Shown piece by piece: positions 34,206-62,600 of a DNA stretch of 64,000 bases (positions are counted from its first letter, which is position 1; the number at the start of each line of letters is the position of its first letter). The position numbers and the translations under genes were made by a program. The stretch is from the NCBI GenBank assembly GCA_030704615.1, contig CM060731.1, positions 34,782,001 to 34,846,000 of the forward strand, written 5' to 3'. The notes under the pieces were generated by a model. It was not told the origin of the DNA. It did no database searches and saw nothing but the letters and a program-made list of their open reading frames with translations. The DNA comes from Takakia lepidozioides (lineage: Eukaryota > Plantae > Bryophyta).

Positions 34206-37200
34206 ATGAGAGGGAGTCTTCACAACCAAGGAGGTATCATCCTCATCCTGGGTGATCACATTCTGCTGAATGTGCTGGAGAGAATAACGGACCGTATAGA
34301 TAGGCAGTCATGGTGCTTAGTTTGCAAGCACTTCCTCTATCTAGAAGCAATTTGCCGAAAAGATTTACAGGTATTGAGATCCGAAGTTCTGTCGAGGGTT
34401 CTTCAGAGATACAGCAACCTCCAACACCTGGATCTGTCCTCCTGCATTCAAGTCACCGACGAGGGTCTAGAGACAGTGGCAAAGTTGTCGGGTTTGCATC
34501 TCGTCTCGATCAAACTTATCAGAGCGGGGGGTTTTACGGACGTTGGGCTGGCAGCTCTAGCAAATAAATGCCTATCCCTGCGGGATGTCGATCTTACTAA
34601 TTGCTCACGAGTTGGGGACTCGGCTCTTATTGCCCTTAGTCAGCTCAAAAATCTGCAGAGTCTAAAGCTTGTGAGTTGTCGGACTATCACCGATACTGGT
34701 CTCGGACGATTGGCGACTGGTTGCAAAGGGCTATGGCTACTCAATTTGAGAGGATGTTTTCTAATCACAGACAAAGGGATTGGTTTTGTTGCAGCCAACT
34801 GCAAGCAGCTCCACACTCTTGACCTTTCCTACACCGAGGTATGGAGTCTTCTTGTCCTGCATTGTTCTCTACTTTCCACAACTTGGATTGAGCTTGCCAA
34901 AACATAGACAGGCGGACTGCTGTCCGTATATAATATGACGTGTACTCTGAGGTAGAGGTAGAGAGAAGAAATTAAGAAACCTTATAACGTCCACAATGCA
35001 CCCAGAGGGCGCAAGCAGTAGAACTACAAGGGGGAAAGAAGAAACATATAATTAAATTTATTAATCCTGCAGGGGGTCCACTTGAGTGAAGAAATGAAAT
35101 GAAACATGTTCAAAGAGGGTAGAGAAAGAGAGAGGAAGACATGTCCATTGGAGGCCAGAGGGCCCAAGGGATAGATTGGGAGAATCAAATGTGGGGTGTG
35201 TATATCCCTGAGATGTAACATGGCAGAGAGGGGTCATAGCTTTCTTGGGAGCTGGTCAGAGGGATACTGATGGTCAATGAATGCGGTGCAGCTCACAGTC
35301 CATGGCTTGTCCTCTGTCGCATCACTGGAGCATCTTGAGGATCTCATTCTTGTCGCATGCAATAGTGTGAGTGATGCTGGCTTGGCTTGCCTCAAGGATG
35401 GTTGTAGGTCTTTAAAGGTATGGCAGATCCCATTGATCTTATTGGCTTATGTTTAGTGGAGATGGATATCTCATCGATGTGAGGATTTTTGTTTAGAACA
35501 CAGGTGCAAAGTTACTGGAGGGTCGAGCAATGATAAATAATCTCTTCTGGCAGATTGATAAATTCTTAATGGATTTTAGATTCACAATTTCAACATTTCA
35601 TGTTGTAGGATATGGCTGCAGATAATAATGACGCCGTGCGGCTTTAATGTCAAAGCAGACAATCTGGAGTGTCAGGATATAGCATGGGCAACTCATGTTG
35701 GCAGAGATTTGTGTGTTTTCTCCTTGTGCTAGCTGTTGCAAGCAAAAAGCAAAAACTGAGTGATTCGGTGGAGGGGTCGTCTCTTTTCTTTATGTCTGGA
35801 AGGAAGGTTTAGAAAGGAAATGATCTTTTTATCTGCATTCTGTAGTAAAGATGGTCACAGTTTTCAGAGCATGGTCTTCCTTGCCGTGGAGATAGTTATA
35901 AATGTTGTTTATGATTGTACATACTTCTAAAGTATGCACAATCAAGACCAGATTTGCAGTGGGGATAGGAGACAAGGAAATCAAGGCCAAAAGGAACACT
36001 ACAAATGCATAGTGGTTGGCATGTGCAGAGTCTGGATGTGTCGAGGTGCCAGAATGTGACTGGTGTGGGCATTGTGACCCTGGCTGGTAGCTCGATACAA
36101 TTGCAACAGCTCACACTCTCCTACTGTTTGCAGGTAATCAAATGCACTTCTCCCATCCATGTCTTCATCATTTATGGCACAGAAGATTCCTCTTCTGAGT
36201 TGGAACAAAGTCTTCACATGAGTTGAATGTCTCTGGCCTTATCAACTTCAGCTTCGTTTACCCTGCACTTAACAGGATGTACCAAGTGGAATGCTGGGTT
36301 CTTTATCTGTTTGATTTAGTCCCTACTTCTGGAAAGAGATTCATCCTGCTGTTGTATGAATGAACCTTGTTCTCTTTACTGAGTCACAATGGCTCAAGAC
36401 TCTGGACATTTAGCCCCAGTAGCTCAAAGGGACAGTGTGTAATTTTTTCATCAAACCATTCCCATGGCTGTTTTGAGAAGAGTGCGCGGCTCATCAAGGA
36501 CTTTGTGTTTGGCAGATATGTGACGATCTGTTTCCAAGTTTCCAGAAGCTAAGATTGCTACAAGGAATAAAGCTGGATGGCTGTGACATTTCTGGGCCTG
36601 GCCTTGAGTTCATAGGCAAAGGCTGTAAGGCATTGAAAGAGTTCAGTGTGAGCAAGTGCCATGGCATAACGGACACTGGTATCGCAGCTCTTGTGGCTGG
36701 CTGTACGGGTCTGCACAAACTGGATCTCACTTGCTGCCGTGACCTGACTGATAAAACACTTGCAGCAATTGCATCAACCTGCAAGGGTCTTCTGAGCCTC
36801 AAGATGGAAGCTTGTGGCCTTATCTCACAGCTCGGCCTGTCCTGGTTATGCAAGGAGTGCCCTTGCCTGGAGGAGCTTGACTTCACAGATAGCAATATCG
36901 ATGACAATGGTACGATTGTCCTACTGTCTCTTGCAAGACGTGGTTTGTGAACAACTGGACAGTGGATTGCAACAGCCAAGAAATTGAGAAAACACGGAAT
37001 GAGGAATAGTGAACTGTGTCCAGGGCTCAGCTCTTGGCATTGGAAGAGCTCGAGTGCCTCATGTACTTCCTGCAAAGTGATTTGAATAGGTTCCCCTGGC
37101 AGTGTCCAGCATGATGGCTGCATCCTATACATAGCATCAGAGTAGGTACTTGGCCTCCTCTTTTGACGATCTTTGTATGCTGCAGGGTTGAAGTCAATTG

Positions 37201-48280: not shown

Positions 48281-50345
48281 CTAGTTCATTATATGGACTA
48301 TAGGGATTCCAGGAATATGGTGCCTTACCTGAAGTCCTTCAGCCGGTGTACAACCTCTTCCTGCTCCTGGTGGCAGACGGCACGGATGGGAGATTGCCTG
48401 TGTAGCCATGCCTCTCCAGAAAGCTTTGTACCGTGCAAGTGACTTTCTATTCCCATCATCCACAGTAGTCATAACTAGGTCTTCACCAGGGTACTGAAGA
48501 CCCTCCTCCATCATGGCAGACAAGTCCAAAATCTTTCCCTTCGTAGCTCTCACCAATGCAAGAAGATGTTGTTGGAGGAATTTGCTAGTATCTGCCAGTT
48601 GAAGAATACTTTCCCACTCTGTAGAGATAAGGGCAAGTAGGTTGGGCAATGGATTTGTACCAGCGGATGTTTTGTGAGCCATAGAAGGGGAGGTCAGACC
48701 TGGGGGAGTTTGTGAAGACGAAGGCATGGAAGAGGGGGACTGATGGGCAGCTAGCAAGTTGTGGATGCCACCTTTACATGTGCCCAATAGGGATCCGCAC
48801 AACTTTGCAATCAGCCCGTCCTCCATATGGGGGTGGAGCATCTTCAAAACCTTTACCTGGTGTGCACACATATTTCCTTTCTGGGCCCAATGACAATCAC
48901 AGCAACCCCACTTAGAATCCGGATTGTGGACAGTATATGTCATACCCAAATGGCAGTGACATTGAACTGTTGCAATGCCTCCGGGTGTGTCAGGCAGGTG
49001 CACATTCGCATCTAGAATGTCGTTGGCAAGCAAAATAGAAGTACAAACAAAACCCTCCTGCCGCTTGTTTCGGATGAACCCATAAGCCTTCGCATATGAC
49101 ATGTACCAGTAATGGGTTAGCACATCACCTGTCAGTTCAGAGATGAGCCAATCCACCCGCCTACTACCAAGGACGTTTTTGGTGCTCTTCAATTGCGCTT
49201 TTAGGTTCCCGTGGTATGCTTCTACGGCAACATTAGTGTCTTGAGAGGCATGAGGTATGTTCCGGGATCCCTTCATCCACATTTGGGCTTTTGGAAGCCA
49301 CTCTGTCTCCATGTAGGTGCAAAATTCTGTCTCAGAAGGGTACTTCTCCCGCATGTCCTGAATTTTGAATACGGCCCATGCTTCACCTGCATCCCCAGAG
49401 GTCTCCTTTCTATCGTACATGGTCTGTGCCAAGTCTTGTAAGATAGCCGCTCGCAATACTGGGTCTTTCACCTTTGCTACAACATTCTTCTGCCAGGCTC
49501 GGCGAACATGCCACAAGCACAAGAAAATAGCACAATCCCCCCACACAGATCTGTTCTCTTATCAGGCAAGTAAACTAAAATTCATGTGTAACTAAGAGAT
49601 CATGGTAGGTATATTGCCTGAGTTCATGGACATACCTAATTGCAGCAATTTCAGCATCTGCGTCATCCACAATAAAGACAGTCGGACGCCAGTCTACCTG
49701 CAGACTTCTCATTTGTTTGTTAAGTGCCTCCATCCAAGGCGTAAGATCGATGGTTTTGCACCTTGCAGTGATAATGTAAGCCACTGGAATACCTTTCAGC
49801 CAGTCATCGAATACCATCATGGTATACAAGGGGTACTGCAGCAATAGTCATGTGTAACTGAAGTGAGTTCAAAGGAAATAGTACAAGAACAGAAAATTTC
49901 ACATGCAGAACATAATTTGACAAGCTTTGAGGACATTTGGGTTAAGAAACTGTCGCAACCTTCTTTTCATTCGTCCCGTTGCATCACAAGCAACTATGCG
50001 ACGATGGCCGTGTTTGAGCATTTGTTTTCTCTGCCAATCAGTTTGTATGCCAAGCACAAATGGAAGGTCCAGTTTTCGGTCATTCAACGTCCACGTAGGG
50101 TGATTACACTCTTCCTGGTAGTAGAAAACACTTGTTGGGTTTTCATGCACCCACATTCGGACACTTTGTGCATCATTGGAGTGCTTTTTGAAAGCACCTG
50201 CATTTCAGTTGCACTTGGTTTCGAAGCAGCAAAACAAGATGGGACACGATGGATTCAGATTTCTCGCCAACCAACATGTCGATTTGCAATTCAAAGAGGA
50301 GGCGGTGCTGATACAGGCTGAACGTAAGGTTTCCTGGTGACAGAA
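48281..50345 (-). mobile_element. Mutator-like (MULE) transposase with SWIM finger, element 1; 5'-truncated and frameshifted
   Basis: FVLGIQTDWQ..IVACDAT, GIPVAY, FIVDDAD, CLWHVRRAW, DTNVAVEAYH (DDE/CxxH motifs) and SWIM CCDC..GNMCAH. Frameshift right after CDAT. Cut by the duplicated block at ~50345. Confidence 0.9.
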
Positions 50346-50348
50346 CCG

Positions 50349-53300
50349 TTTCTTTCTTTCCACAAATCAAAACTTACGGTGGCGAGGTTATAAGACTTTC
50401 AACACTTGGTGAGTTCCCACACAAAGTTAGGATTCCCCAAAATTAGGTCACACACACACAAAGCACAATTTAGGGGATGCAGTTGGGAACATGATTCATT
50501 GCTGAAGTTTTGTAGATTTTAACATGTTTTCAGTTATGAACAAAAAGGTGGTCAGAGGTGCAGATTTTGCAATCAATGGTGAAAAAAATTGTAAGCCTTT
50601 AGGGTTTAAAATGTTTACTTGAAAGAAATTCACACTAGATGAATGGGCTAGCAAGGGTGGTATGAACAGTTGGTGAGTGCACATAGAAGGCTGGATAGAT
50701 ATAAATACATCTTTGAAATTCATTGGATGGATTTTTTTTGCAATATCTAGATGGTTTCAATTTTTCTTTGGATTAAATATGCCTCTAGATAGGGTCAAAC
50801 TGGCTGCCAAGTCATTGACTGCCAACACCAATTAAACATCCAGAGTATTAGACATGAATTAGCTAGTTAGTATCAAACAGAAGACGGAGATCTAAACTAC
50901 TTGAATTCTCTAAAATAATACAACGAGCCACGGCAATAATATGTAGTATATCGATGTGAATTCATATAATCACATCAACAATGAGTATTTATCTAGACGA
51001 TGCAAGCATACTCATTTATATTGATTTGTGCCAGTGCTCCACGCAGCATAAGATGTATCAGGAACATAGACATAAAGAACCACATTTCCATCGTCTTGCA
51101 CGTTCAATGAACATCCAGTTGTGTTATCACGTCTTTCCACATCATGGGTCCATAGGACATTGTTTGTCAATCCATCTCTAATTGACATGACCCCATACTT
51201 AGTGAGAGACACATAACAATTGGAACCTTTGTTATAGGTCCCAGAAGACCACAATGAGAAGACGTCCATGTACTTGTACAACACCAAATTGCAATCGCTT
51301 TGCATTTCAAACTTGTAATTGCAGTTGTTGCTAACGAGCCAGTCATCTGCATACATCTTTTGGCTGTTCCACATTACACTGTTACCGCAAAAGCTACAAT
51401 CGATGCCAACACCACTAACACATGTTGCAAACGATATTGCCAATGTCACTAACAAAATGGTTATAGATTTTCTAGTATTCCCTCATTCACTTTGCATCAA
51501 GAACGTAAAATTGGGTGGTTTGGACATGTGCAAATCTAGTGGTAGATCTATGCAGATAGACAAATAGATAGAATGTGTATGAGAAAAGAGTGACATCCTC
51601 AACGAGATCTCAATATTTATTGCTTAATCCCTAAACGTCTGCCCACGGGGTTTGTTGACTTTTCCGGAAAAAAATGATCCATGTCTAGTAAAAAACACCT
51701 TATAACTTGGGGAGAACTTGACCTTTTGATAATTCAACCTAACATATTCCTAGCCACCTACCCCCTGCATGCGGTCCTATATTCCAAATTTGAGGCCAAT
51801 CAGGGAAGACATGCAAAAACCCCACTGTTGCATTTGGTGCCCTATTTTTGGCATTTTTCAAAAATGAACTAGAAAACAACAGGATTTTGCAGATTTTGGA
51901 TGTCGGGTTGAAATCTGTTGGGTGTGGTGGATGGAATTTTAAATACCCACAACAGTCTTCTTCTAACATCCCCAAGATCTAACAATTTGGAAGAGATTAC
52001 GCCACGTTGGGGGGGGGGGGGGGCTTCCAAATATTTCCACTCGTCATGCAAAAAAATATAGGGTACAGTATATTCCTGGCAGATAAAATTTAGAAAACAA
52101 TTACAAATAAGTATGGGTACCAATATATCGTGGTTTCGGGATTTAAATGAACCCTGTTCTCCAAAAAAATAAAAAAATAAATGAAGATACGGTCTAGAAT
52201 ATAGACTACTATTGTTTTTTAGAACTACCAATAGGCCGGTACCGATAAAGGTCCAGGTGACACGTGTCGTCTTGTTACTGGTTTATTTGCAATGGGTACT
52301 TCAAAATGAGGCGGGCTAGACTTGGATTTGGGGACTTGGAGTACTGTTGACAGCACTTGGTTCACGGGGGAGGAGATTGAATTTAGGATTGGGCTTCGAT
52401 GTGCTTCTCTTCTTTGGTTGCGATCACTTCCCACTTAGTTCAGTTACTATGACTTTTGACAAAGTTCATAATGCTTATAGCTTGAATGCCATTGATGCCT
52501 AAGCTTTGGATGAGTTTGTTTCGACCAAGTAATGTACTGTAAAAATAAAAAAAAACTTTTATTGTATTGTTGACATAGCGTGCTTGGAAATGCTAGCAGC
52601 AGAAAAATATAATTAACATAGCCTGTCAGAAAATCCAGTATTTTATAAATTATGTAAGTATAGGGTGGTCGATATATATATATATATCCCCACACAAATT
52701 ACCCCATTTTCGCAAGTGATATATAAAAAGATATAGGGAGTCCCTTGCTCGAGCTCATTTTGTTTGTGCGATGGTGTAATGGAGGATTAAATGGTGTATA
52801 AGATAAGAATATATATCCTAACTGCCACCGATGATGATATAATAATCTTGAATAAAAGTTACACAATGGAGGATAAATTCTATGCACACTACAAATAGGG
52901 CCCACCCTCGAAAGGAGGCAATAGCCGCGAGGCGAAGTGGCGTGTAGTTTATATGCCGGCTTCGGCCGGAGTCTTCTCTCTCTGCACACCACAACAAAAC
53001 ATGTTTGTCACTTATCACCAAATTCAATAATTACACTAGAGAAAAATAAATAAATAAATAAAGTTTTCTTAAAAATTGTGAGATAAGCCATAGTTCTAGG
53101 GTACGTGGAATAAGTGGTGTTGATGTCGTCATGTGTGGTCACACATCGTTGGTGGGAGATTAGTCATTCGATACTTGGATGATAGCTAACGTATCCTACG
53201 TCATGTGAAATGTATAACAACTATCTTTTGCGATCTCTTCGACACCTTTGGTAACAAGATATCTTTGCTACTTTATAACATCGCAATACCTTACAACAAG

Positions 53301-53713
53301 ATATTTTCTTGATACCATCAATGGTTCTCAATATCTTCGACATATGGATCTAGAAATACACACGGAATATTTGTTTGAATCCAACCCATATTTATCTGTA
53401 GTAATGTCATGCCATGTAGCCATTGTGATCAACACCTTTTCGTAGTTTTAGAAAATCTAACATCACCGGCATAGTATGCAAACTCTTATTTTAATTCATG
53501 TATTTCGACGAAGTGTATGTTGCGAGTGTTCAATTGTCAAATCGAATACATGATTCGCAATTCATAGAAGTCTGAGACTCATTAGTTTTCTCTTGTAAGT
53601 AGGGTAGTGAGCACCGGACAGATACCCATGGCCACACATAATGATAGTTCAAGGGTAAAGTCATGAGAAATCAGCACATGTGATAGTAATGGATGTCTTG
53701 TCATCTATGATCG
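50349..53713. repeat. Segmental duplication, copy 1 (~3.4 kb, lectin block)
   Basis: Colinear with 57673-61189 from gtttctttctttccacaaatc to ctatgatcg. Confidence 0.95.
51012..51470 (-). pseudogene. GNA-related/bulb-type mannose-binding lectin, copy 1; ORF intact but start codon inverted out (next in-frame ATG at 51374)
   Basis: QSDCNLVLY and QDDGNVVLY mannose-site motifs and a hydrophobic signal peptide ILLVTLAISFATCVS. An in-frame TGA lies upstream with no in-frame ATG, because 51471-51531 is inverted relative to copy 2. Confidence 0.85.
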
Positions 53714-57649: not shown

Positions 57650-58321
57650 GAGTAAACCTCCTTTTGTCCACAGTTTCTTTCTTTCCACAAATCAAAACTT
57701 GCGGCGGCGAGGTTATAAGACTTTCAACACTTGGTTAGAGTTCCCACACAAAGTTAGTATTCCCCCAAAGTCACAACTTAGGGGATGCAATTGGGAACAT
57801 GATTCATTGCTGAAGTTTTGTTAGATCTTAACATGTTTTCAGTTATGAACGAAAAGGTGGTCAGAGGTGCAGATTTTGCAATCAATGGTGAAAAAAATTG
57901 TAAGCCTTTAGGGTTTAAAATGCTTACTTGAAAGAAATTCACACTAGATGGATGGGCTAGCAAGGGTGGTATGAGTGCACATAGAAGACTGGATAGATAT
58001 AAACACATCTCTGAAATTCATTGGACAGATTTTTTTTGCAATATCTAGATAGTTTCAATCTTTCTTTGGATTAAATATGCCCCTAGATAGGGTCAAACTG
58101 GCTGCCAAGTCATTGACTGCCAACACCAATTAAACATCCAGAATATTAGGCTCTTATAGGCATGAATTAGCTAGTTGTATCAATCAAAAGACGGAGGTCG
58201 AAGCTACTTGAAATCTCTAAAATAATACAGCGAGCCACGACAATAATAAGTAGTATATTGATGTGAATTCAATATATAATCACATCAACAGTGAGTATTT
58301 ATCTAGACGATGCAAGCATAC

Positions 58322-58804
58322 TCATTTATATTGATTTGTGCCAGTGCTCCACACAGCATAAGATGTATCAGGAACATAGACATAAAGAACCACATTTCCA
58401 TCGTCTTGCACGTTCAATGAACATCGAATTGTGTTATCGTGTCTTTCCACATTATGGGTCCATAGGACATTGTTTGTCGATCCATCTGTAATTGACATGA
58501 CCCCATACTTAGTGAAAGACACATAACAATTAGAACCTTTGTTATAGGTCCCAGAAGACCACAATGAGGTGGCGTCCGCTTTCTTGTACAACACCAAATT
58601 GCAGTCACTCTGCATTTCAAACTTGTAAATGTTGTTGTTGCTAATGAGCCAGTCATCTGCATACATTGTTTGGCTGTTCCACATTACACTGTTAGTGCCG
58701 CAAAAGCTACATTCGATGCCAACATCACTAACACATGTTGCAAACGATATTGCCAATGTCACTAACAAAATGGTTATAGATTTGCACATGTCCAAACCAC
58801 CCAT
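58322..58804 (-). CDS. Secreted GNA-related/bulb-type mannose-binding lectin, copy 2 (intact, intronless, 160 aa)
   Basis: MGGLDMCKSITILLVTLAISFATCVS signal peptide, then a B-lectin domain with two canonical QxDxNxVxY sites (QSDCNLVLY, QDDGNVVLY) and one degenerate site (TKYGVMSI). Confidence 0.9.
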   Translation of the reverse strand: MGGLDMCKSITILLVTLAISFATCVSDVGIECSFCGTNSVMWNSQTMYADDWLISNNNIYKFEMQSDCNLVLYKKADATSLWSSGTYNKGSNCYVSFTKYGVMSITDGSTNNVLWTHNVERHDNTIRCSLNVQDDGNVVLYVYVPDTSYAVWSTGTNQYK

Positions 58805-58945
58805 CTTTACTTTCTTGATGCAATGTGTTGAAGTGACTAAGGGGATACTAAAAAATTGGTGGTAGATATATACATATAGACAAATAAATAGAATGTGTAA
58901 GTGAGAAAAGAGTGACTTCCTCAAAGAGATCTCAATATTTATTGC

Positions 58946-59645
58946 TTAACCCCTAAACGCCCGCGGGGTCTGTTGACTTTTCCGTGACATGCGAAACCCC
59001 ACTAATGCATGTGGTGCCCTATTTTTGGCATTCATCAATAATGAACTAGAAAACAACATGATTTTGCAGATTCTGGATGTCGGGTTGAAATCTGTTGAGT
59101 GTGGTGGAGGGAACCTTATTACCCACGGCATTCTTGTTCTAACAAGCCCAAGATCTAACAATTTGGAAGAGATTACGACACGTGACATTTGGTCAAGGGA
59201 GGGGGGGAGGGTTGGTAGGGGGTGGTGGAATTGTCATGTGAATGATCCTGTACAAGTTAGTATTTTTTAGCATTAAAGACAAGTTGCATTACTCCAATAT
59301 CAAAGGCAACCTGCAAGAGATAATGAGCATTGTGTGCTAGGTTATAAGAAGAGAGAAAGGAAATCAAGAACAAAATGAAACAAGTGGGAGCCACCCAAGC
59401 CATATCCATGGCCCTTGTAAACCTAGTAGCTCATTGGGTCAACTCGAAGCAGCAACAGAATTTATAAACTCAAACACCTCAACTATGACCGCAGCTTCCA
59501 AAAGAGGACCAAAAGAGGGAGTCCACAACGCCTCTTCTGGCACTTTTATGTGATGATAGGGCGGCTGGCTTACATTTGCAAAAGTTACACACCCTTAAAC
59601 AACCAATTCGACTCGTTTTGGGCCTTGCGGACGTTTAGGGGTTAA
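58946..59645. mobile_element. piggyBac-like MITE with TTAA target duplication
   Basis: TTAA(58946-49)-cccctaaacgcccgc ... gcggacgtttagggg-TTAA(59642-45), TIR 14/15. A right-deleted homologue starts at ~51624 in copy 1. Confidence 0.7.
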
Positions 59646-62600
59646 CATGCGATAGTGGAAACTCATAACTAACGTTTGGATACAAAAATATTCTTGGGAG
59701 AGGGGGGGGGGCACTTCCAAATATTTCCACTCGACATGCAAAAAAATATAGGGTACAATATATTCTTGGCAGATAAAATTTAGAAAATTATTACAAATAA
59801 GTACGGGTATAGATATATCATGGTTTGGGAATTTAAATGAAGATATGGTCTGGAATATAGATTTTTTTTTTTCAACTACCAATAGGGTATCGATAAAGAC
59901 AGAGGACACATGTCGTCTAGTTATTGGTTTATTTGCAATGTGTACTTCAAAACCAGGCAGGCTAGACTTGGATTCGGGGACTTGGACTTTTTACGGCACT
60001 TGGTTCGTGGGGGAGGAATTTGAGTTTAGGATTGGGCTTCGCTTTGCTTCTCTTCTTTGGTTGCGATCACTTTCCACTTAGTTCAGTTTACATGACTTTG
60101 ATAAAGTTCAGAATGCTTATACTGATGCCCAAGCTAATTTGAATGAGTTTGTTTCGACCAAGTAATGAACTATTTTTTACTATAAAAACTTTCTCTTATT
60201 GCATTGTTAACATAGCGTGCCTGAAATTTGCTAGTAGCATAAAAGTATAATTAATACAACATGTCAGAAAATCCAGTATTTTACAAAATTATGTAAGTAT
60301 AGGGTTGGCCGATAAAGACAAAAAAACAAATGATATATCCCCATACAAATTTCACAAGTGATATATAAATGATATAGGGAGTGCCCGCTCGGAAAACTAT
60401 TCTAGTAGAATCTATATGGACTGCTCAAGCTCATTTTGTTTGTGCGATGGTGTAATGGAGGATTAGATGGTGTATAAGATAAAATATATATCCTAACTGC
60501 CACCGATGGTGATATAATAATCAGTAATAATCAATACACACTGGACGATAAATTCTATGCACACAACAACAAAAATATATTTGTCATATATCACCAAATT
60601 CGTGTTGATGTCGTCATGTGTGGTCACATATTGTTGGTGGGAGATTAGTCATTCGACATAGCTGACATATCCTATGTGAAATGTATAACAACTATCTTCT
60701 GCGATCTCTTCGACACCTTTGGTAACAAGATATTTTTGCTATTTTATACGTCGCAATACCAGCTTACAACAAGATACTTTCTTGATACCATCGATGGTTC
60801 TCGATATCTTCGACATATGGATCTTGAAATACACATGGAATATCTCTTTGAATCCAACCCACGTTTATCTGTAGTAATGTCATGCCGTGTAGCCATTGTG
60901 ATCAACACATTTTCATAGTTTTAGAAAATTTAACAGTTAAATGGACATCACCGGCATATGGAAACTCCTCTTTAAATTCATGTCTTTCGACGAATTGTAT
61001 GCTGCCAGTGTTGACAAATCAATGATTGACACATACATGATTCACAGTTCATAGAAGTATGAGACTCATTAGGGTAGTGAGCCCTATCACCGGACAGAGA
61101 CCCATGGCCACACATAATGATAATTCAAGGATGAACTGATGAGAAATCAGCACATGTGATATTAATGGATGTCCTGTCACCTATGATCGAAATCCATTGA
61201 TAACTTCATCCTATAGAGATGAAAGTGTACGGTCATATCTAGCCTCGTTACCCTATTTCATTTTTTGGCACATGTATGGCAACATGACTATAATTCTAAT
61301 TTGAACGTACGTGGAGAGACCATACTCTAAAGCTCCGACTTCTTCTTGTGGTAAAAACACATTGAGAAGCTCATGCAACAAGGTAGCATATGAGACTATG
61401 GATTGGAAATGATCATCACGCTAATTAGCAATCCCAGGTCATTGCAAGCTATGATGGCTATGAGACCTTCCCACCTAAAGAAAGATGTATATGCAAGTAA
61501 TCACTTACGTTTTGGTCTCCAAATGGTGATTTAGAATGGTCCAAACTTTATTGGTGTCCTTGATTGATACCACACCTCATTTGGACGATTATTGGGTATG
61601 ATCATGTATGTCTTAACAACATGTGAGTTCAGGTATTAACCCTTGACTTCCTACGGGGCCTGTTTCAGGTTGATGTGTCTGGAGGACCATCCTAACTTTT
61701 GCAGATGAACTTTTTTTTCATCCATTCCTTCAAGCATTTATTGCTCATGAGGTGGCCCACCGGCTCCAATTTATTGCATACCATTTGGAGCAGGTAGGCA
61801 ACCTCTAGTTTTTTCTAAAAAGACAAGGGTCAGAAGACAAGGGGTGGAGGAGAGTTGACTAGACATGTGGGCCCCCCTCATTGAGCCACCCCACTCCCGG
61901 AATTTGCAATGTGAATTCCCGTTAGATCATATTGAAAATTTGCCTATTGCTTCAAGCCAGGTGCAGCCCCTCACCAGAGGGATTTTCTTAATTTTGGTTT
62001 TTGGGATGACATGTTTTGGAGGGAAGCTTCAAGTTTGTATGTTTTTATTTATTTATTTTGGGTGTGTGTTTGTTAGGGATGGACATGTCAACCCTTACCA
62101 AAACACATACAAAGCAGCATATGCAAGAAAATGTTGGTTTGATGTGAAAGTTGGCATGCACTTTGCATTTGTAATGTACATTATGAAAATTTGGGGTAGC
62201 CCTTTTGGAAAATTCTCAAAGCCCCTCAACAAGCTTGGTCAAAGCAAATAAAGGTTTTTTTCAAAGCAAAAATTTAAAAAAACTTTCCCAGAAAAACAAT
62301 ATAATCTCTCAAACCCAACGGTGAAAATTCCTGAAATTTGGGTAGATGGTGTAGAGGCCAACTAGATATGTATGTGTATGGTTCATTTTTGTGAATGAAT
62401 GCTGGTAGATGGGTAGCCCCCGATTAGTTCCAAGGGGTAGTAGTTTTTGAGAGAGGAAAAATTCACCTTGTAAGGAAGCTAAGGATTAACTACCAAATAT
62501 CTATATCTAAGCACGTGAGAATGTCGATACCCACCTATAGCTAGATAGGGGTTGGATATAGATTTTTCAAAAATTGTTTGTGTTGGTCTTATCTTGTATA

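What the first reader, a model, noticed from the sequence alone, without database searches (positions are those of the whole stretch)
51464..51538. Start-codon 'inverton': a 61-bp flip between perfect inverted repeats switches lectin copy 1 off or retargets it
Seen: lectin copy 2 reads ...ttggacATGtgcaaatcta... on the minus (coding) strand. In copy 1 the same segment (51471-51531) lies on the plus strand, bounded by perfect IRs tagattt (51464-51470) and aaatcta (51532-51538). Flipping it back restores MCKSITILLVTL.. and aligns with copy 2, where the right IR is imperfect. The downstream ORF has no stop or frameshift. Known: replication template switching at quasi-palindromes makes such micro-inversions and perfects the IR, and bacterial invertons use IR-flanked flips as switches. 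Inference: this is either a recent knockout or a polymorphic/reversible ON-OFF switch. Translation from Met 51374 would drop the signal peptide but keep nearly the whole B-lectin domain (a cytosolic form), though the flip also creates short uORFs.
Basis: partly seen in the sequence, partly recalled or inferred. Interest (0 to 1): 0.8.

Follow-up and report, generated by a model that had tools for sequence, protein, structure and literature searches.

The report
Micro-inversion removes a lectin start codon
One of two neighbouring copies of a plant sugar-binding (snowdrop-type) lectin gene has had the 61 bases holding its start codon flipped, most likely by a one-off DNA-copying slip that broke or crippled the gene, and nothing suggests a reversible switch.

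Summary
On the minus strand, copy 1 (ORF 51012-51470) and copy 2 (CDS 58322-58804) are tandem paralogs of a GNA-type (bulb-type, B-lectin) gene. Flipping 51471-51531 restores colinearity with copy 2. It is the only opposite-strand match between the two 3.4-kb duplicated units (E 1e-14). The arms TAGATTT and AAATCTA are perfect.

Short-read contigs from two DNA runs of one sample span both junctions without any difference, at single-copy depth, so this is not an assembly artefact. The only strand-changing contig is copy 2 itself. No un-flipped copy 1 was seen, and no RNA contig lay on either copy.

The pattern fits a known mutation class. This is a short-range replication template switch of type 1-3-4-2, which inverts a spacer and creates the flanking repeat. 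With copy 2 as ancestral proxy, one switch plus one substitution explains the junctions.

The flip separates ATG-TGC from the signal-peptide codons and leaves an in-frame TGA upstream. The first in-frame ATG is at 51374. The "inverton" reading is not supported:
- the arms are 7 bases, AT-rich and common by chance;
- no recombinase was found in the window;
- only one orientation was found.

It is a tidy example of a known kind and of modest interest.

The parts
51464..51470 (.). Arm of the inverted repeat on the coding side (TAGATTT on +; AAATCTA on the coding strand = codons 3-5, K-S-I). Shared with copy 2, so ancestral.
   Evidence: identical in copy 2 at 58777-58783
51471..51531 (.). The 61-nt inverted segment. 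It holds the probable 5' leader plus codons 1-2 (ATG TGC), which now lie on the + strand.
   Evidence: Flipping restores colinearity with copy 2. Opposite-strand match to 58784-58823, E 1e-14. The tblastn piece for residues 1-9 (MGGLDMCKS) lies on the + strand at 51511-51537.
51532..51538 (.). Arm of the inverted repeat on the upstream side (AAATCTA on +). Probably created by the event, because copy 2 has CAATTTT here (coding strand).
   Evidence: 3 differences in 9 nt against copy 2, P about 0.03 at 8% divergence
51012..51470 (-). Copy 1 lectin reading frame after the breakpoint (KSITILLVTL... to the stop). It is open but has no ATG ahead of the signal-peptide codons.
51483..51485 (-). In-frame TGA just upstream of the surviving frame, brought in by the inversion.
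51483..51527 (-). 14-codon upstream ORF (MSKPPNFTFLMQSE*). The ACATGT palindrome keeps an ATG after the flip, and that ATG starts it.
51372..51374 (-). First in-frame ATG after the break. It would give a 120-aa product without the signal peptide.
   Evidence: the GNA core aligns from residue 39 of copy 2
58322..58804 (-). Copy 2, intact lectin CDS: 160 aa from ATG 58804, or 155 aa from ATG 58789.
58784..58851 (-). Copy 2's un-inverted counterpart of the flipped segment.
58852..58858 (-). Copy 2's imperfect upstream arm (CAATTTT on the coding strand).
50345..53713 (.). Duplicated unit 1 (holds copy 1).
57670..61189 (.). Duplicated unit 2 (holds copy 2), in five blastn pieces 83-91% identical to unit 1.

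Best explanation
Copy 1 and copy 2 are tandem paralogs of a secreted GNA-type lectin gene in a land-plant (moss or clubmoss) nuclear genome.

In the lineage of copy 1, a single replication error inverted the segment. The nascent strand left its template just upstream of the leader and copied the opposite strand backwards. It started from the end of codons 3-5 (AAATCTA), ran through ATG-TGC and the leader, and then returned at AAATCTA. This is a short-range template switch of type 1-3-4-2 in the four-point model.

That one event inverted 61 nt. It also wrote a reverse-complement copy of AAATCTA at the upstream junction, which is why the repeat is perfect.

The consequence (inferred) is that the start codon and second codon now lie on the other strand, an in-frame TGA precedes the signal-peptide codons, and the probable transcription start region is turned round. 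The canonical secreted protein therefore cannot be made. Copy 1 is most likely a young pseudogene, or at best a weakly translated product truncated at the N terminus.

The orientation is fixed in the one sample available. It is not a regulated switch.
For: Shown:
- The inversion relative to the paralog is real.
- Copy 2's orientation must be ancestral, because only there is an ATG joined to the signal-peptide codons that both copies share.
- With copy 2 as the reference, forward alignment needs 35 events. The best plain in-place inversion needs 13, including two extra indels of 7-8 nt. A four-point switch needs 12, with one 8-nt indel, and has the best score (115 against 100). Its point 1 lies right after CTACCAC, point 2 at the end of AAATCTA, and points 3 and 4 in the T/A run.
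[quoted passage not shown] Arm homogenisation with spacer inversion is also documented in yeast genes (PMC8604942).
- 560-nt Logan contigs in DNA runs X1 and X2 cover 51441-52000 with 0 differences, at depths 36 and 55. Neighbouring contigs have similar depth.
- The only 'opposite strands' joint belongs to the 423-nt contig that carries copy 2's own differences and its 150-nt gap.
- An in-frame TGA lies at 51485-51483, and the first in-frame ATG is at 51374.

Consistent with decay but not decisive:
- dN/dS between the copies is 0.79, with coding divergence about equal to flank divergence.
- Three substitutions remove the TATA-like motif upstream of copy 1.
- No RNA contig lies on either copy.
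Against: - There is no outgroup. The ancestral state of the upstream arm rests on one paralog. The arm could have been perfect before the event and decayed in copy 2, although 3 differences in 9 nt has P of about 0.03.
- A copied fragment of about 75 nt is long for this class. The yeast cases have spacers of 3-5 nt between the arms.
- The reads evidence is from assembled contigs of one sample. Contigs drop rare variants, so a minor second orientation or polymorphism among individuals is not excluded.
- The two RNA-like runs are small and their type is a guess, so 'not expressed' is not shown.
- Copy 1 keeps both canonical QxDxNxVxY motifs and all three core tryptophans (direct reading), so a residual function is not excluded.
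Confidence: 0.78

Rival explanations
1. The segment was inverted once between an already perfect 7-nt inverted repeat, by hairpin or cruciform processing or by an inter-strand switch within existing arms. Copy 2's upstream arm decayed afterwards.
For: In 9 of 10 yeast spacer inversions the arms were already perfect (PMC8604942). No outgroup is available to polarise the arm.
Against: It needs three extra changes in 9 nt on copy 2's side, P of about 0.03. A 7-nt stem with one G-C pair and a 61-nt loop is not in the predicted fold (MFE -4.1 kcal/mol, z 0.61). The four-point solution explains the arm at no extra cost.
Confidence: 0.14
2. It is a reversible or polymorphic ON-OFF switch ('inverton'). 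The segment flips back and forth, turning the secreted lectin on and off.
For: The segment is flanked by an inverted repeat, the ORF behind it is intact, and flipping back would restore a full gene. Spacer inversions recurred and reverted on evolutionary time in yeast.
Against: Bacterial invertons need a site-specific recombinase and show both orientations in one clonal sample (10.1101/2023.03.11.532203). Here one orientation only is seen in two DNA runs. No recombinase is in the window; there are only MULE transposase remnants. The arms are 7 nt and common by chance. The intact ORF is expected in about half of dead copies.
Confidence: 0.03
3. The flip made a new isoform. Translation from Met 51374 gives a cytosolic lectin without a signal peptide, and the gene is kept for that.
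For: Met 51374 lies about 3 residues into the GNA core as aligned to solved structures. Some GNA-related lectins naturally lack a signal peptide and are nucleocytoplasmic (PMC3048538). The upstream ORFs are very short at 2-14 codons. The binding motifs are intact.
Against: No RNA contig was found. The transcription start region itself is inverted and the TATA-like motif is mutated. dN/dS is 0.79, no different from neutral. Three to five upstream ATGs precede Met 51374.
Confidence: 0.1
4. It is an assembly or polishing artefact.
For: Small inversions can arise in assemblies. The DNA runs may come from the same sample as the assembly.
Against: Independently built k-mer contigs in two runs cross both junctions with no difference, at the depth of their single-copy neighbours. 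No competing contig exists.
Confidence: 0.02

Closest known systems
Short-range template switch mutations: Ripley's quasi-palindrome model, and type 1-3-4-2 of the four-point model of Löytynoja and Goldman (PMC5453318)
   Same: A reverse-complement copy of adjacent sequence replaces the original. The spacer is inverted, a perfect inverted repeat appears at the junctions, and the differences look like a dense mutation cluster in a forward alignment.
   Different: The copied fragment is long (about 75 nt). It lies in a land-plant nuclear gene and removes a start codon. The ancestral state is inferred from a paralog rather than an orthologue.
Template-switch spacer inversions in yeast coding genes (PMC8604942)
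   Same: Arm homogenisation plus spacer inversion inside genes. The events can revert only as further rare mutations.
   Different: The listed yeast examples have arms of 10-16 nt and spacers of 3-5 nt, and they change one or a few residues. Here the arms are 7 nt, the spacer is 61 nt, and the start of translation is lost.
Bacterial invertons, meaning invertible promoters and intragenic invertons (10.1101/2023.03.11.532203)
   Same: An inverted-repeat-flanked DNA segment whose orientation decides whether a gene can be read.
   Different: Those are enzyme-driven and reversible, and both orientations co-occur in a clonal sample. None of these features is seen here, and the host is a plant nucleus.
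GNA-related (bulb-type, B-lectin) mannose-binding lectins, secreted or vacuolar versus nucleocytoplasmic forms (PMC3048538)
   Same: Single beta-prism-II-type domain of about 110 residues behind a signal peptide. Matches SCAfet, gastrodianin and GNA structures at E 4e-14 to 1e-7. Two canonical QxDxNxVxY sites.
   Different: The sequences are divergent: Pfam B_lectin scores below its cut-off, and the word-based search found no close relative. There is a Cys-rich stretch of 12-14 residues between the signal peptide and the domain.

Membership tests
Template switch mutation, type 1-3-4-2 | The region of dissimilarity is explained by a reverse-complement copy of adjacent sequence | tested here: met
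   Alignment score 65 to 183 on flipping. It is the only opposite-strand match between the units, E 1e-14.
Template switch mutation, type 1-3-4-2 | The switch solution needs at least two fewer differences than the forward alignment | tested here: met
   35 events forward against 12 under the four-point model. The criterion is from PMC5453318.
Template switch mutation, type 1-3-4-2 | Order of switch points 1<3<4<2, which gives a new inverted repeat around an inverted spacer | tested here: met
   The best solutions put point 1 after CTACCAC, point 2 at the end of AAATCTA, and points 3 and 4 inside. The arms are perfect at 7/7.
Template switch mutation, type 1-3-4-2 | The ancestral state is known from an orthologue or outgroup | not testable with these tools
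   Only the paralog is available. The word-based protein search found no relatives. The findings index had no look-alikes.
Inverton (site-specific invertible element) | Both orientations present in DNA of one clonal sample | tested here: inconclusive
   Only the window's orientation was found with copy-1 flanks in runs X1 and X2. The single strand-changing contig is copy 2. These are contigs, which can drop rare variants.
Inverton (site-specific invertible element) | A cognate site-specific recombinase (invertase) | tested here: not met
   No recombinase was found among the ORFs scanned around the locus; only a weak MULE transposase domain. The rest of the genome was not searched.
Inverton (site-specific invertible element) | Inverted repeats that serve as specific recombination sites, beyond chance occurrence | tested here: not met
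   7-nt arms occur 5-6 times per 400 nt here. The stem is not in the predicted fold.
GNA-related / B-lectin domain | Sequence similarity to the family | tested here: met
   PDB phmmer gives 1dlp 4e-14, 1xd6 1.3e-13 and GNA 1npl 7e-10. Atlas neighbours carry PF01453. Pfam itself scores below its cut-off: 23.4 and 20.1 bits against 32.4.
GNA-related / B-lectin domain | QxDxNxVxY mannose-binding motifs | tested here: met
   QSDCNLVLY and QDDGNVVLY are present in both copies. The middle site is degenerate in both (read).

The most novel reading that the evidence does not exclude
The perfect arms left by the first event make the segment a recurrent template-switch hotspot. The flipped and un-flipped forms of copy 1 would then segregate, or arise somatically, in populations of this plant. 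That would give a mutational ON/OFF polymorphism of a secreted defence-type lectin: an enzyme-free, eukaryotic counterpart of phase variation.
Probability: 0.04. Interest if true: 0.7.

Novelty: new member of a known kind. Interest (0 to 1): 0.25.

Why it matters
This is a clean, well-bounded example of a short-range template switch in a land-plant nuclear gene. The ancestral form is preserved 7.3 kb away in the paralog. One replication slip produced an apparent cluster of about 35 differences, created a perfect inverted repeat, and removed a start codon.

Such events are easily misread as dense point mutation, as selection, or as a designed switch. They are well documented in bacteria, yeast and great apes, and my searches turned up no account of them in plant nuclear genomes. 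The example is useful for annotation, because copy 1 should not be called as an intact secreted lectin, and as a teaching case. It does not open a new mechanism.

Tried and rejected
1. The word-based protein search with copy 2 found no relatives. That left no orthologous loci to fetch and no outgroup.
2. I did not run the large profile search. The PDB match settled the family, and distant relatives could not polarise a 5' leader.
3. I did not try exact-sequence contig look-ups, because the protein is not in that collection.
4. Two attempts at the brute-force four-point search gave degenerate solutions, because end gaps or gap extension were nearly free. A first unit-cost run was confounded by an unrelated 8-nt indel. 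One search, with ordinary affine costs, is the one I use.
5. I looked for a second template switch behind the TATA-region cluster and the 51259-51272 coding cluster. No donor of 11 nt or more exists in the window.
6. The findings index, searched by words and by sequence, gave nothing.
7. Hairpin-driven inversion: the 7-nt stem is not in the predicted fold.

Full report
**What is there**

The window holds two tandem units, 50345-53713 and 57670-61189. They align in five pieces that are 83-91% identical, with starts about 7.3 kb apart. Each unit carries, on the minus strand, a small intron-less reading frame for a lectin.

Copy 2 is complete. ATGs at 58804 and 58789 lead into a hydrophobic N-terminus (MCKSITILLVTLAISFATCVS) and then a domain of about 120 residues ending at 58322.

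The domain matches solved GNA-family structures: Scilla SCAfet 1dlp at E 4e-14, gastrodianin at 1.3e-13 and snowdrop-type agglutinins at 1e-9 to 1e-7. Its language-model neighbours carry PF01453. Pfam's own B_lectin model scores below its cut-off, at 23.4 and 20.1 bits against 32.4.

Two of the three QxDxNxVxY motifs (QSDCNLVLY and QDDGNVVLY) and the three core tryptophans are present in both copies (read).

A weak MULE transposase match next to copy 1 and an F-box/LRR frame elsewhere in the window fit a land-plant nuclear genome. Earlier notes of this scan call the genome a moss or a clubmoss. I did not test that.

**Checking the observation**

The arms TAGATTT (51464-51470) and AAATCTA (51532-51538) are exact complements with 61 nt between them.

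- The 19-mer TTGGACATGTGCAAATCTA lies on the + strand in copy 1 and on the - strand in copy 2.
- Flipping 51471-51531 raises the global alignment score of copy 1's 5' region against copy 2 from 65 to 183.
- Across the whole 3.4-kb units, the only significant opposite-strand match is 51492-51538 against 58823-58777, E 1e-14.
- Copy 2's upstream arm is imperfect, reading CAATTTT on the coding strand.

The repeat by itself means little, since 7-nt inverted pairs within 120 nt occur 5-6 times per 400 nt here. Its position exactly at independently defined breakpoints is not chance; the probability is about 9e-5 for fixed places.

The downstream frame of copy 1 is open over 152 aligned codons with one in-frame 3-nt indel.

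**Is it in the DNA, and is it polymorphic?**

One search for sequencing runs found four DNA runs of one sample that hold the stretch, and two small RNA-like runs of other samples.

In DNA runs X1 and X2, a 560-nt Logan contig covers 51441-52000, across both junctions, with no difference. Its depth is 36 and 55, like the neighbouring single-copy contigs.

The one 'opposite strands' joint (51488/51580) comes from a 423-nt contig. That contig also carries 19 other letters and skips 51667-51816, so it is copy 2 laid on copy 1 at the 90% threshold I chose.

No contig joins copy-1 flanks to the un-flipped segment. An assembly artefact is therefore very unlikely, and a second orientation was not seen. 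Two limits apply: contigs can drop rare variants, and only one sample could be examined.

Neither RNA-like run has a contig on copy 1 or copy 2. This is weak negative evidence only, because the runs are small and their type is a guess.

**Which state is derived?**

Both copies share the signal-peptide codons, and only copy 2's orientation joins an ATG to them. Copy 1 is therefore the derived state (sequence logic).

**Mechanism**

I took copy 2 as the ancestral proxy and counted events needed to reach copy 1:

| Model | Events | Detail |
|---|---|---|
| Forward alignment | 35 | 27 mismatches, 8 gaps |
| Best plain in-place inversion | 13 | includes two extra 7-8-nt indels, because it cannot make the second arm |
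| Four-point template switch | 12 | a single unrelated 8-nt indel; best score, 115 against 100 |

In the four-point solution the strand leaves the template right after CTACCAC. It restarts on the opposite strand at the end of AAATCTA, copies back through GTGC...TAGTAT into the T-run, and returns at AAATCTA.

The switch points lie in the order 1<3<4<2. [quoted passage not shown] It made up 23% of their human-chimp events (PMC5453318). The classic Ripley model and the yeast survey describe the same pairing of arm homogenisation with spacer inversion (PMC8604942).

At the junctions, one switch plus one substitution accounts for copy 1. The alternative is a perfect arm that existed beforehand, and it needs three changes in 9 nt on copy 2's side, P about 0.03. 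I favour creation of the arm by the event at about 4:1, but only an outgroup can settle it.

A hairpin is not required. The 7-nt stem has one G-C pair, and it does not appear in the predicted fold (MFE -4.1 kcal/mol, z 0.61).

**Consequences for copy 1**

On the coding strand, the frame that continues into KSITILLVTL... is now closed upstream by a TGA at 51485-51483.

The ACATGT palindrome keeps an ATG after the flip, at 51527. This ATG opens only a 14-codon upstream ORF that ends at that TGA. Further ATGs lie at 51596, 51497, 51486 and 51423, and the last three open ORFs of 2-4 codons. The first in-frame ATG is at 51374.

A product from that ATG would have 120 residues. It would lack the signal peptide and a short Cys-rich stretch, and would start about three residues into the GNA core as aligned to 1npl.

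Several points speak against it, though each is inference and not proof:
- The inverted segment probably includes the transcription start and the leader.
- The TATA-like TATATGTATATATC of copy 2 (58865-58878) reads TATCTGCATAGATC in copy 1 (51545-51558).
- dN/dS between the copies is 0.79 (7 synonymous, 22 non-synonymous changes), no different from neutral. Coding divergence (6%) equals flank divergence (5-8%).

The intact ORF carries no weight. With 14 random substitutions, 49% of simulated copies stay free of stop codons.

**Comparison with invertons**

Bacterial invertons are defined by three things: a site-specific recombinase acting on specific inverted repeats, reversibility, and co-occurrence of both orientations in a clonal sample (10.1101/2023.03.11.532203).

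Here the repeat is chance-sized, no recombinase was found in the window, only one orientation was seen, and the host is a plant nucleus. What this locus shares with an inverton is its layout, a segment flanked by inverted repeats. Its mechanism is a different one.

The yeast work notes that spacer inversions can revert through later template switches. A rare back-mutation is therefore conceivable, but that is mutation and not regulation.

**Verdict**

This is a real, well-supported micro-inversion of a known mutational kind. It very probably disabled the canonical secreted product of one of two lectin paralogs.

Confidence in a one-off template-switch inversion, fixed in the sampled plant, is about 0.78. 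A reversible switch is at about 0.03. Novelty is a new member of a known kind, and interest is modest at 0.25.

Noticed in passing
window 51259-51272 vs 58569-58582: Seven differences in 14 nt between the two lectin copies change four of five residues (copy 1 YMDVF, copy 2 KADAT). Such a cluster has P of about 8e-4 among 28 differences in 456 nt. No donor of 11 nt or more was found in the window on either strand. It may be micro-conversion from a paralog elsewhere, a second small switch, or selection.
   Followed up: partly
window 51545-51558 vs 58865-58878: The TATA-like TATATGTATATATC about 60-75 nt upstream of copy 2's ATG carries three substitutions in copy 1 (TATCTGCATAGATC), which remove both TATA runs. 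One of them creates an 8-nt palindrome, TAGATCTA.
   Followed up: partly
window 51667-51816: A stretch of about 150 nt upstream of copy 1 is absent from copy 2, whose contig has 9 other letters there. It has single-copy depth in the DNA runs, so it is not a high-copy transposon. Whether it is an insertion or a deletion is not resolved.
   Followed up: no
window 51273-51305: Four or five extra Logan contigs pile up on the 33 nt that code for the QxDxNxVxY motif, among them a 551-nt contig of the RNA-like run X5. Further B-lectin paralogs probably exist elsewhere in this genome, and at least one may be expressed. At 51294 and 51300 they agree with copy 2, so copy 1 is derived at these two synonymous sites.
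   Followed up: no
window 48281-49844 (-): Long open frames just downstream of copy 1 look like a MULE (Mutator-like) transposase remnant. The Pfam MULE match is weak, E 0.004, on 49578-49844. The 421-aa frame has no Pfam hit.
   Followed up: partly
window 34206-34907 (+): A frame with an F-box followed by leucine-rich repeats (Pfam F-box_5, LRR_6, LRR_4).
   Followed up: no
window 51015-51470 vs 58325-58783: The differences between the lectin copies avoid both ends. There are none in the first 19 aligned codons, which code the signal peptide, and one in the last 30 codons. They concentrate in the middle of the domain. Overall dN/dS is 0.79.
   Followed up: partly
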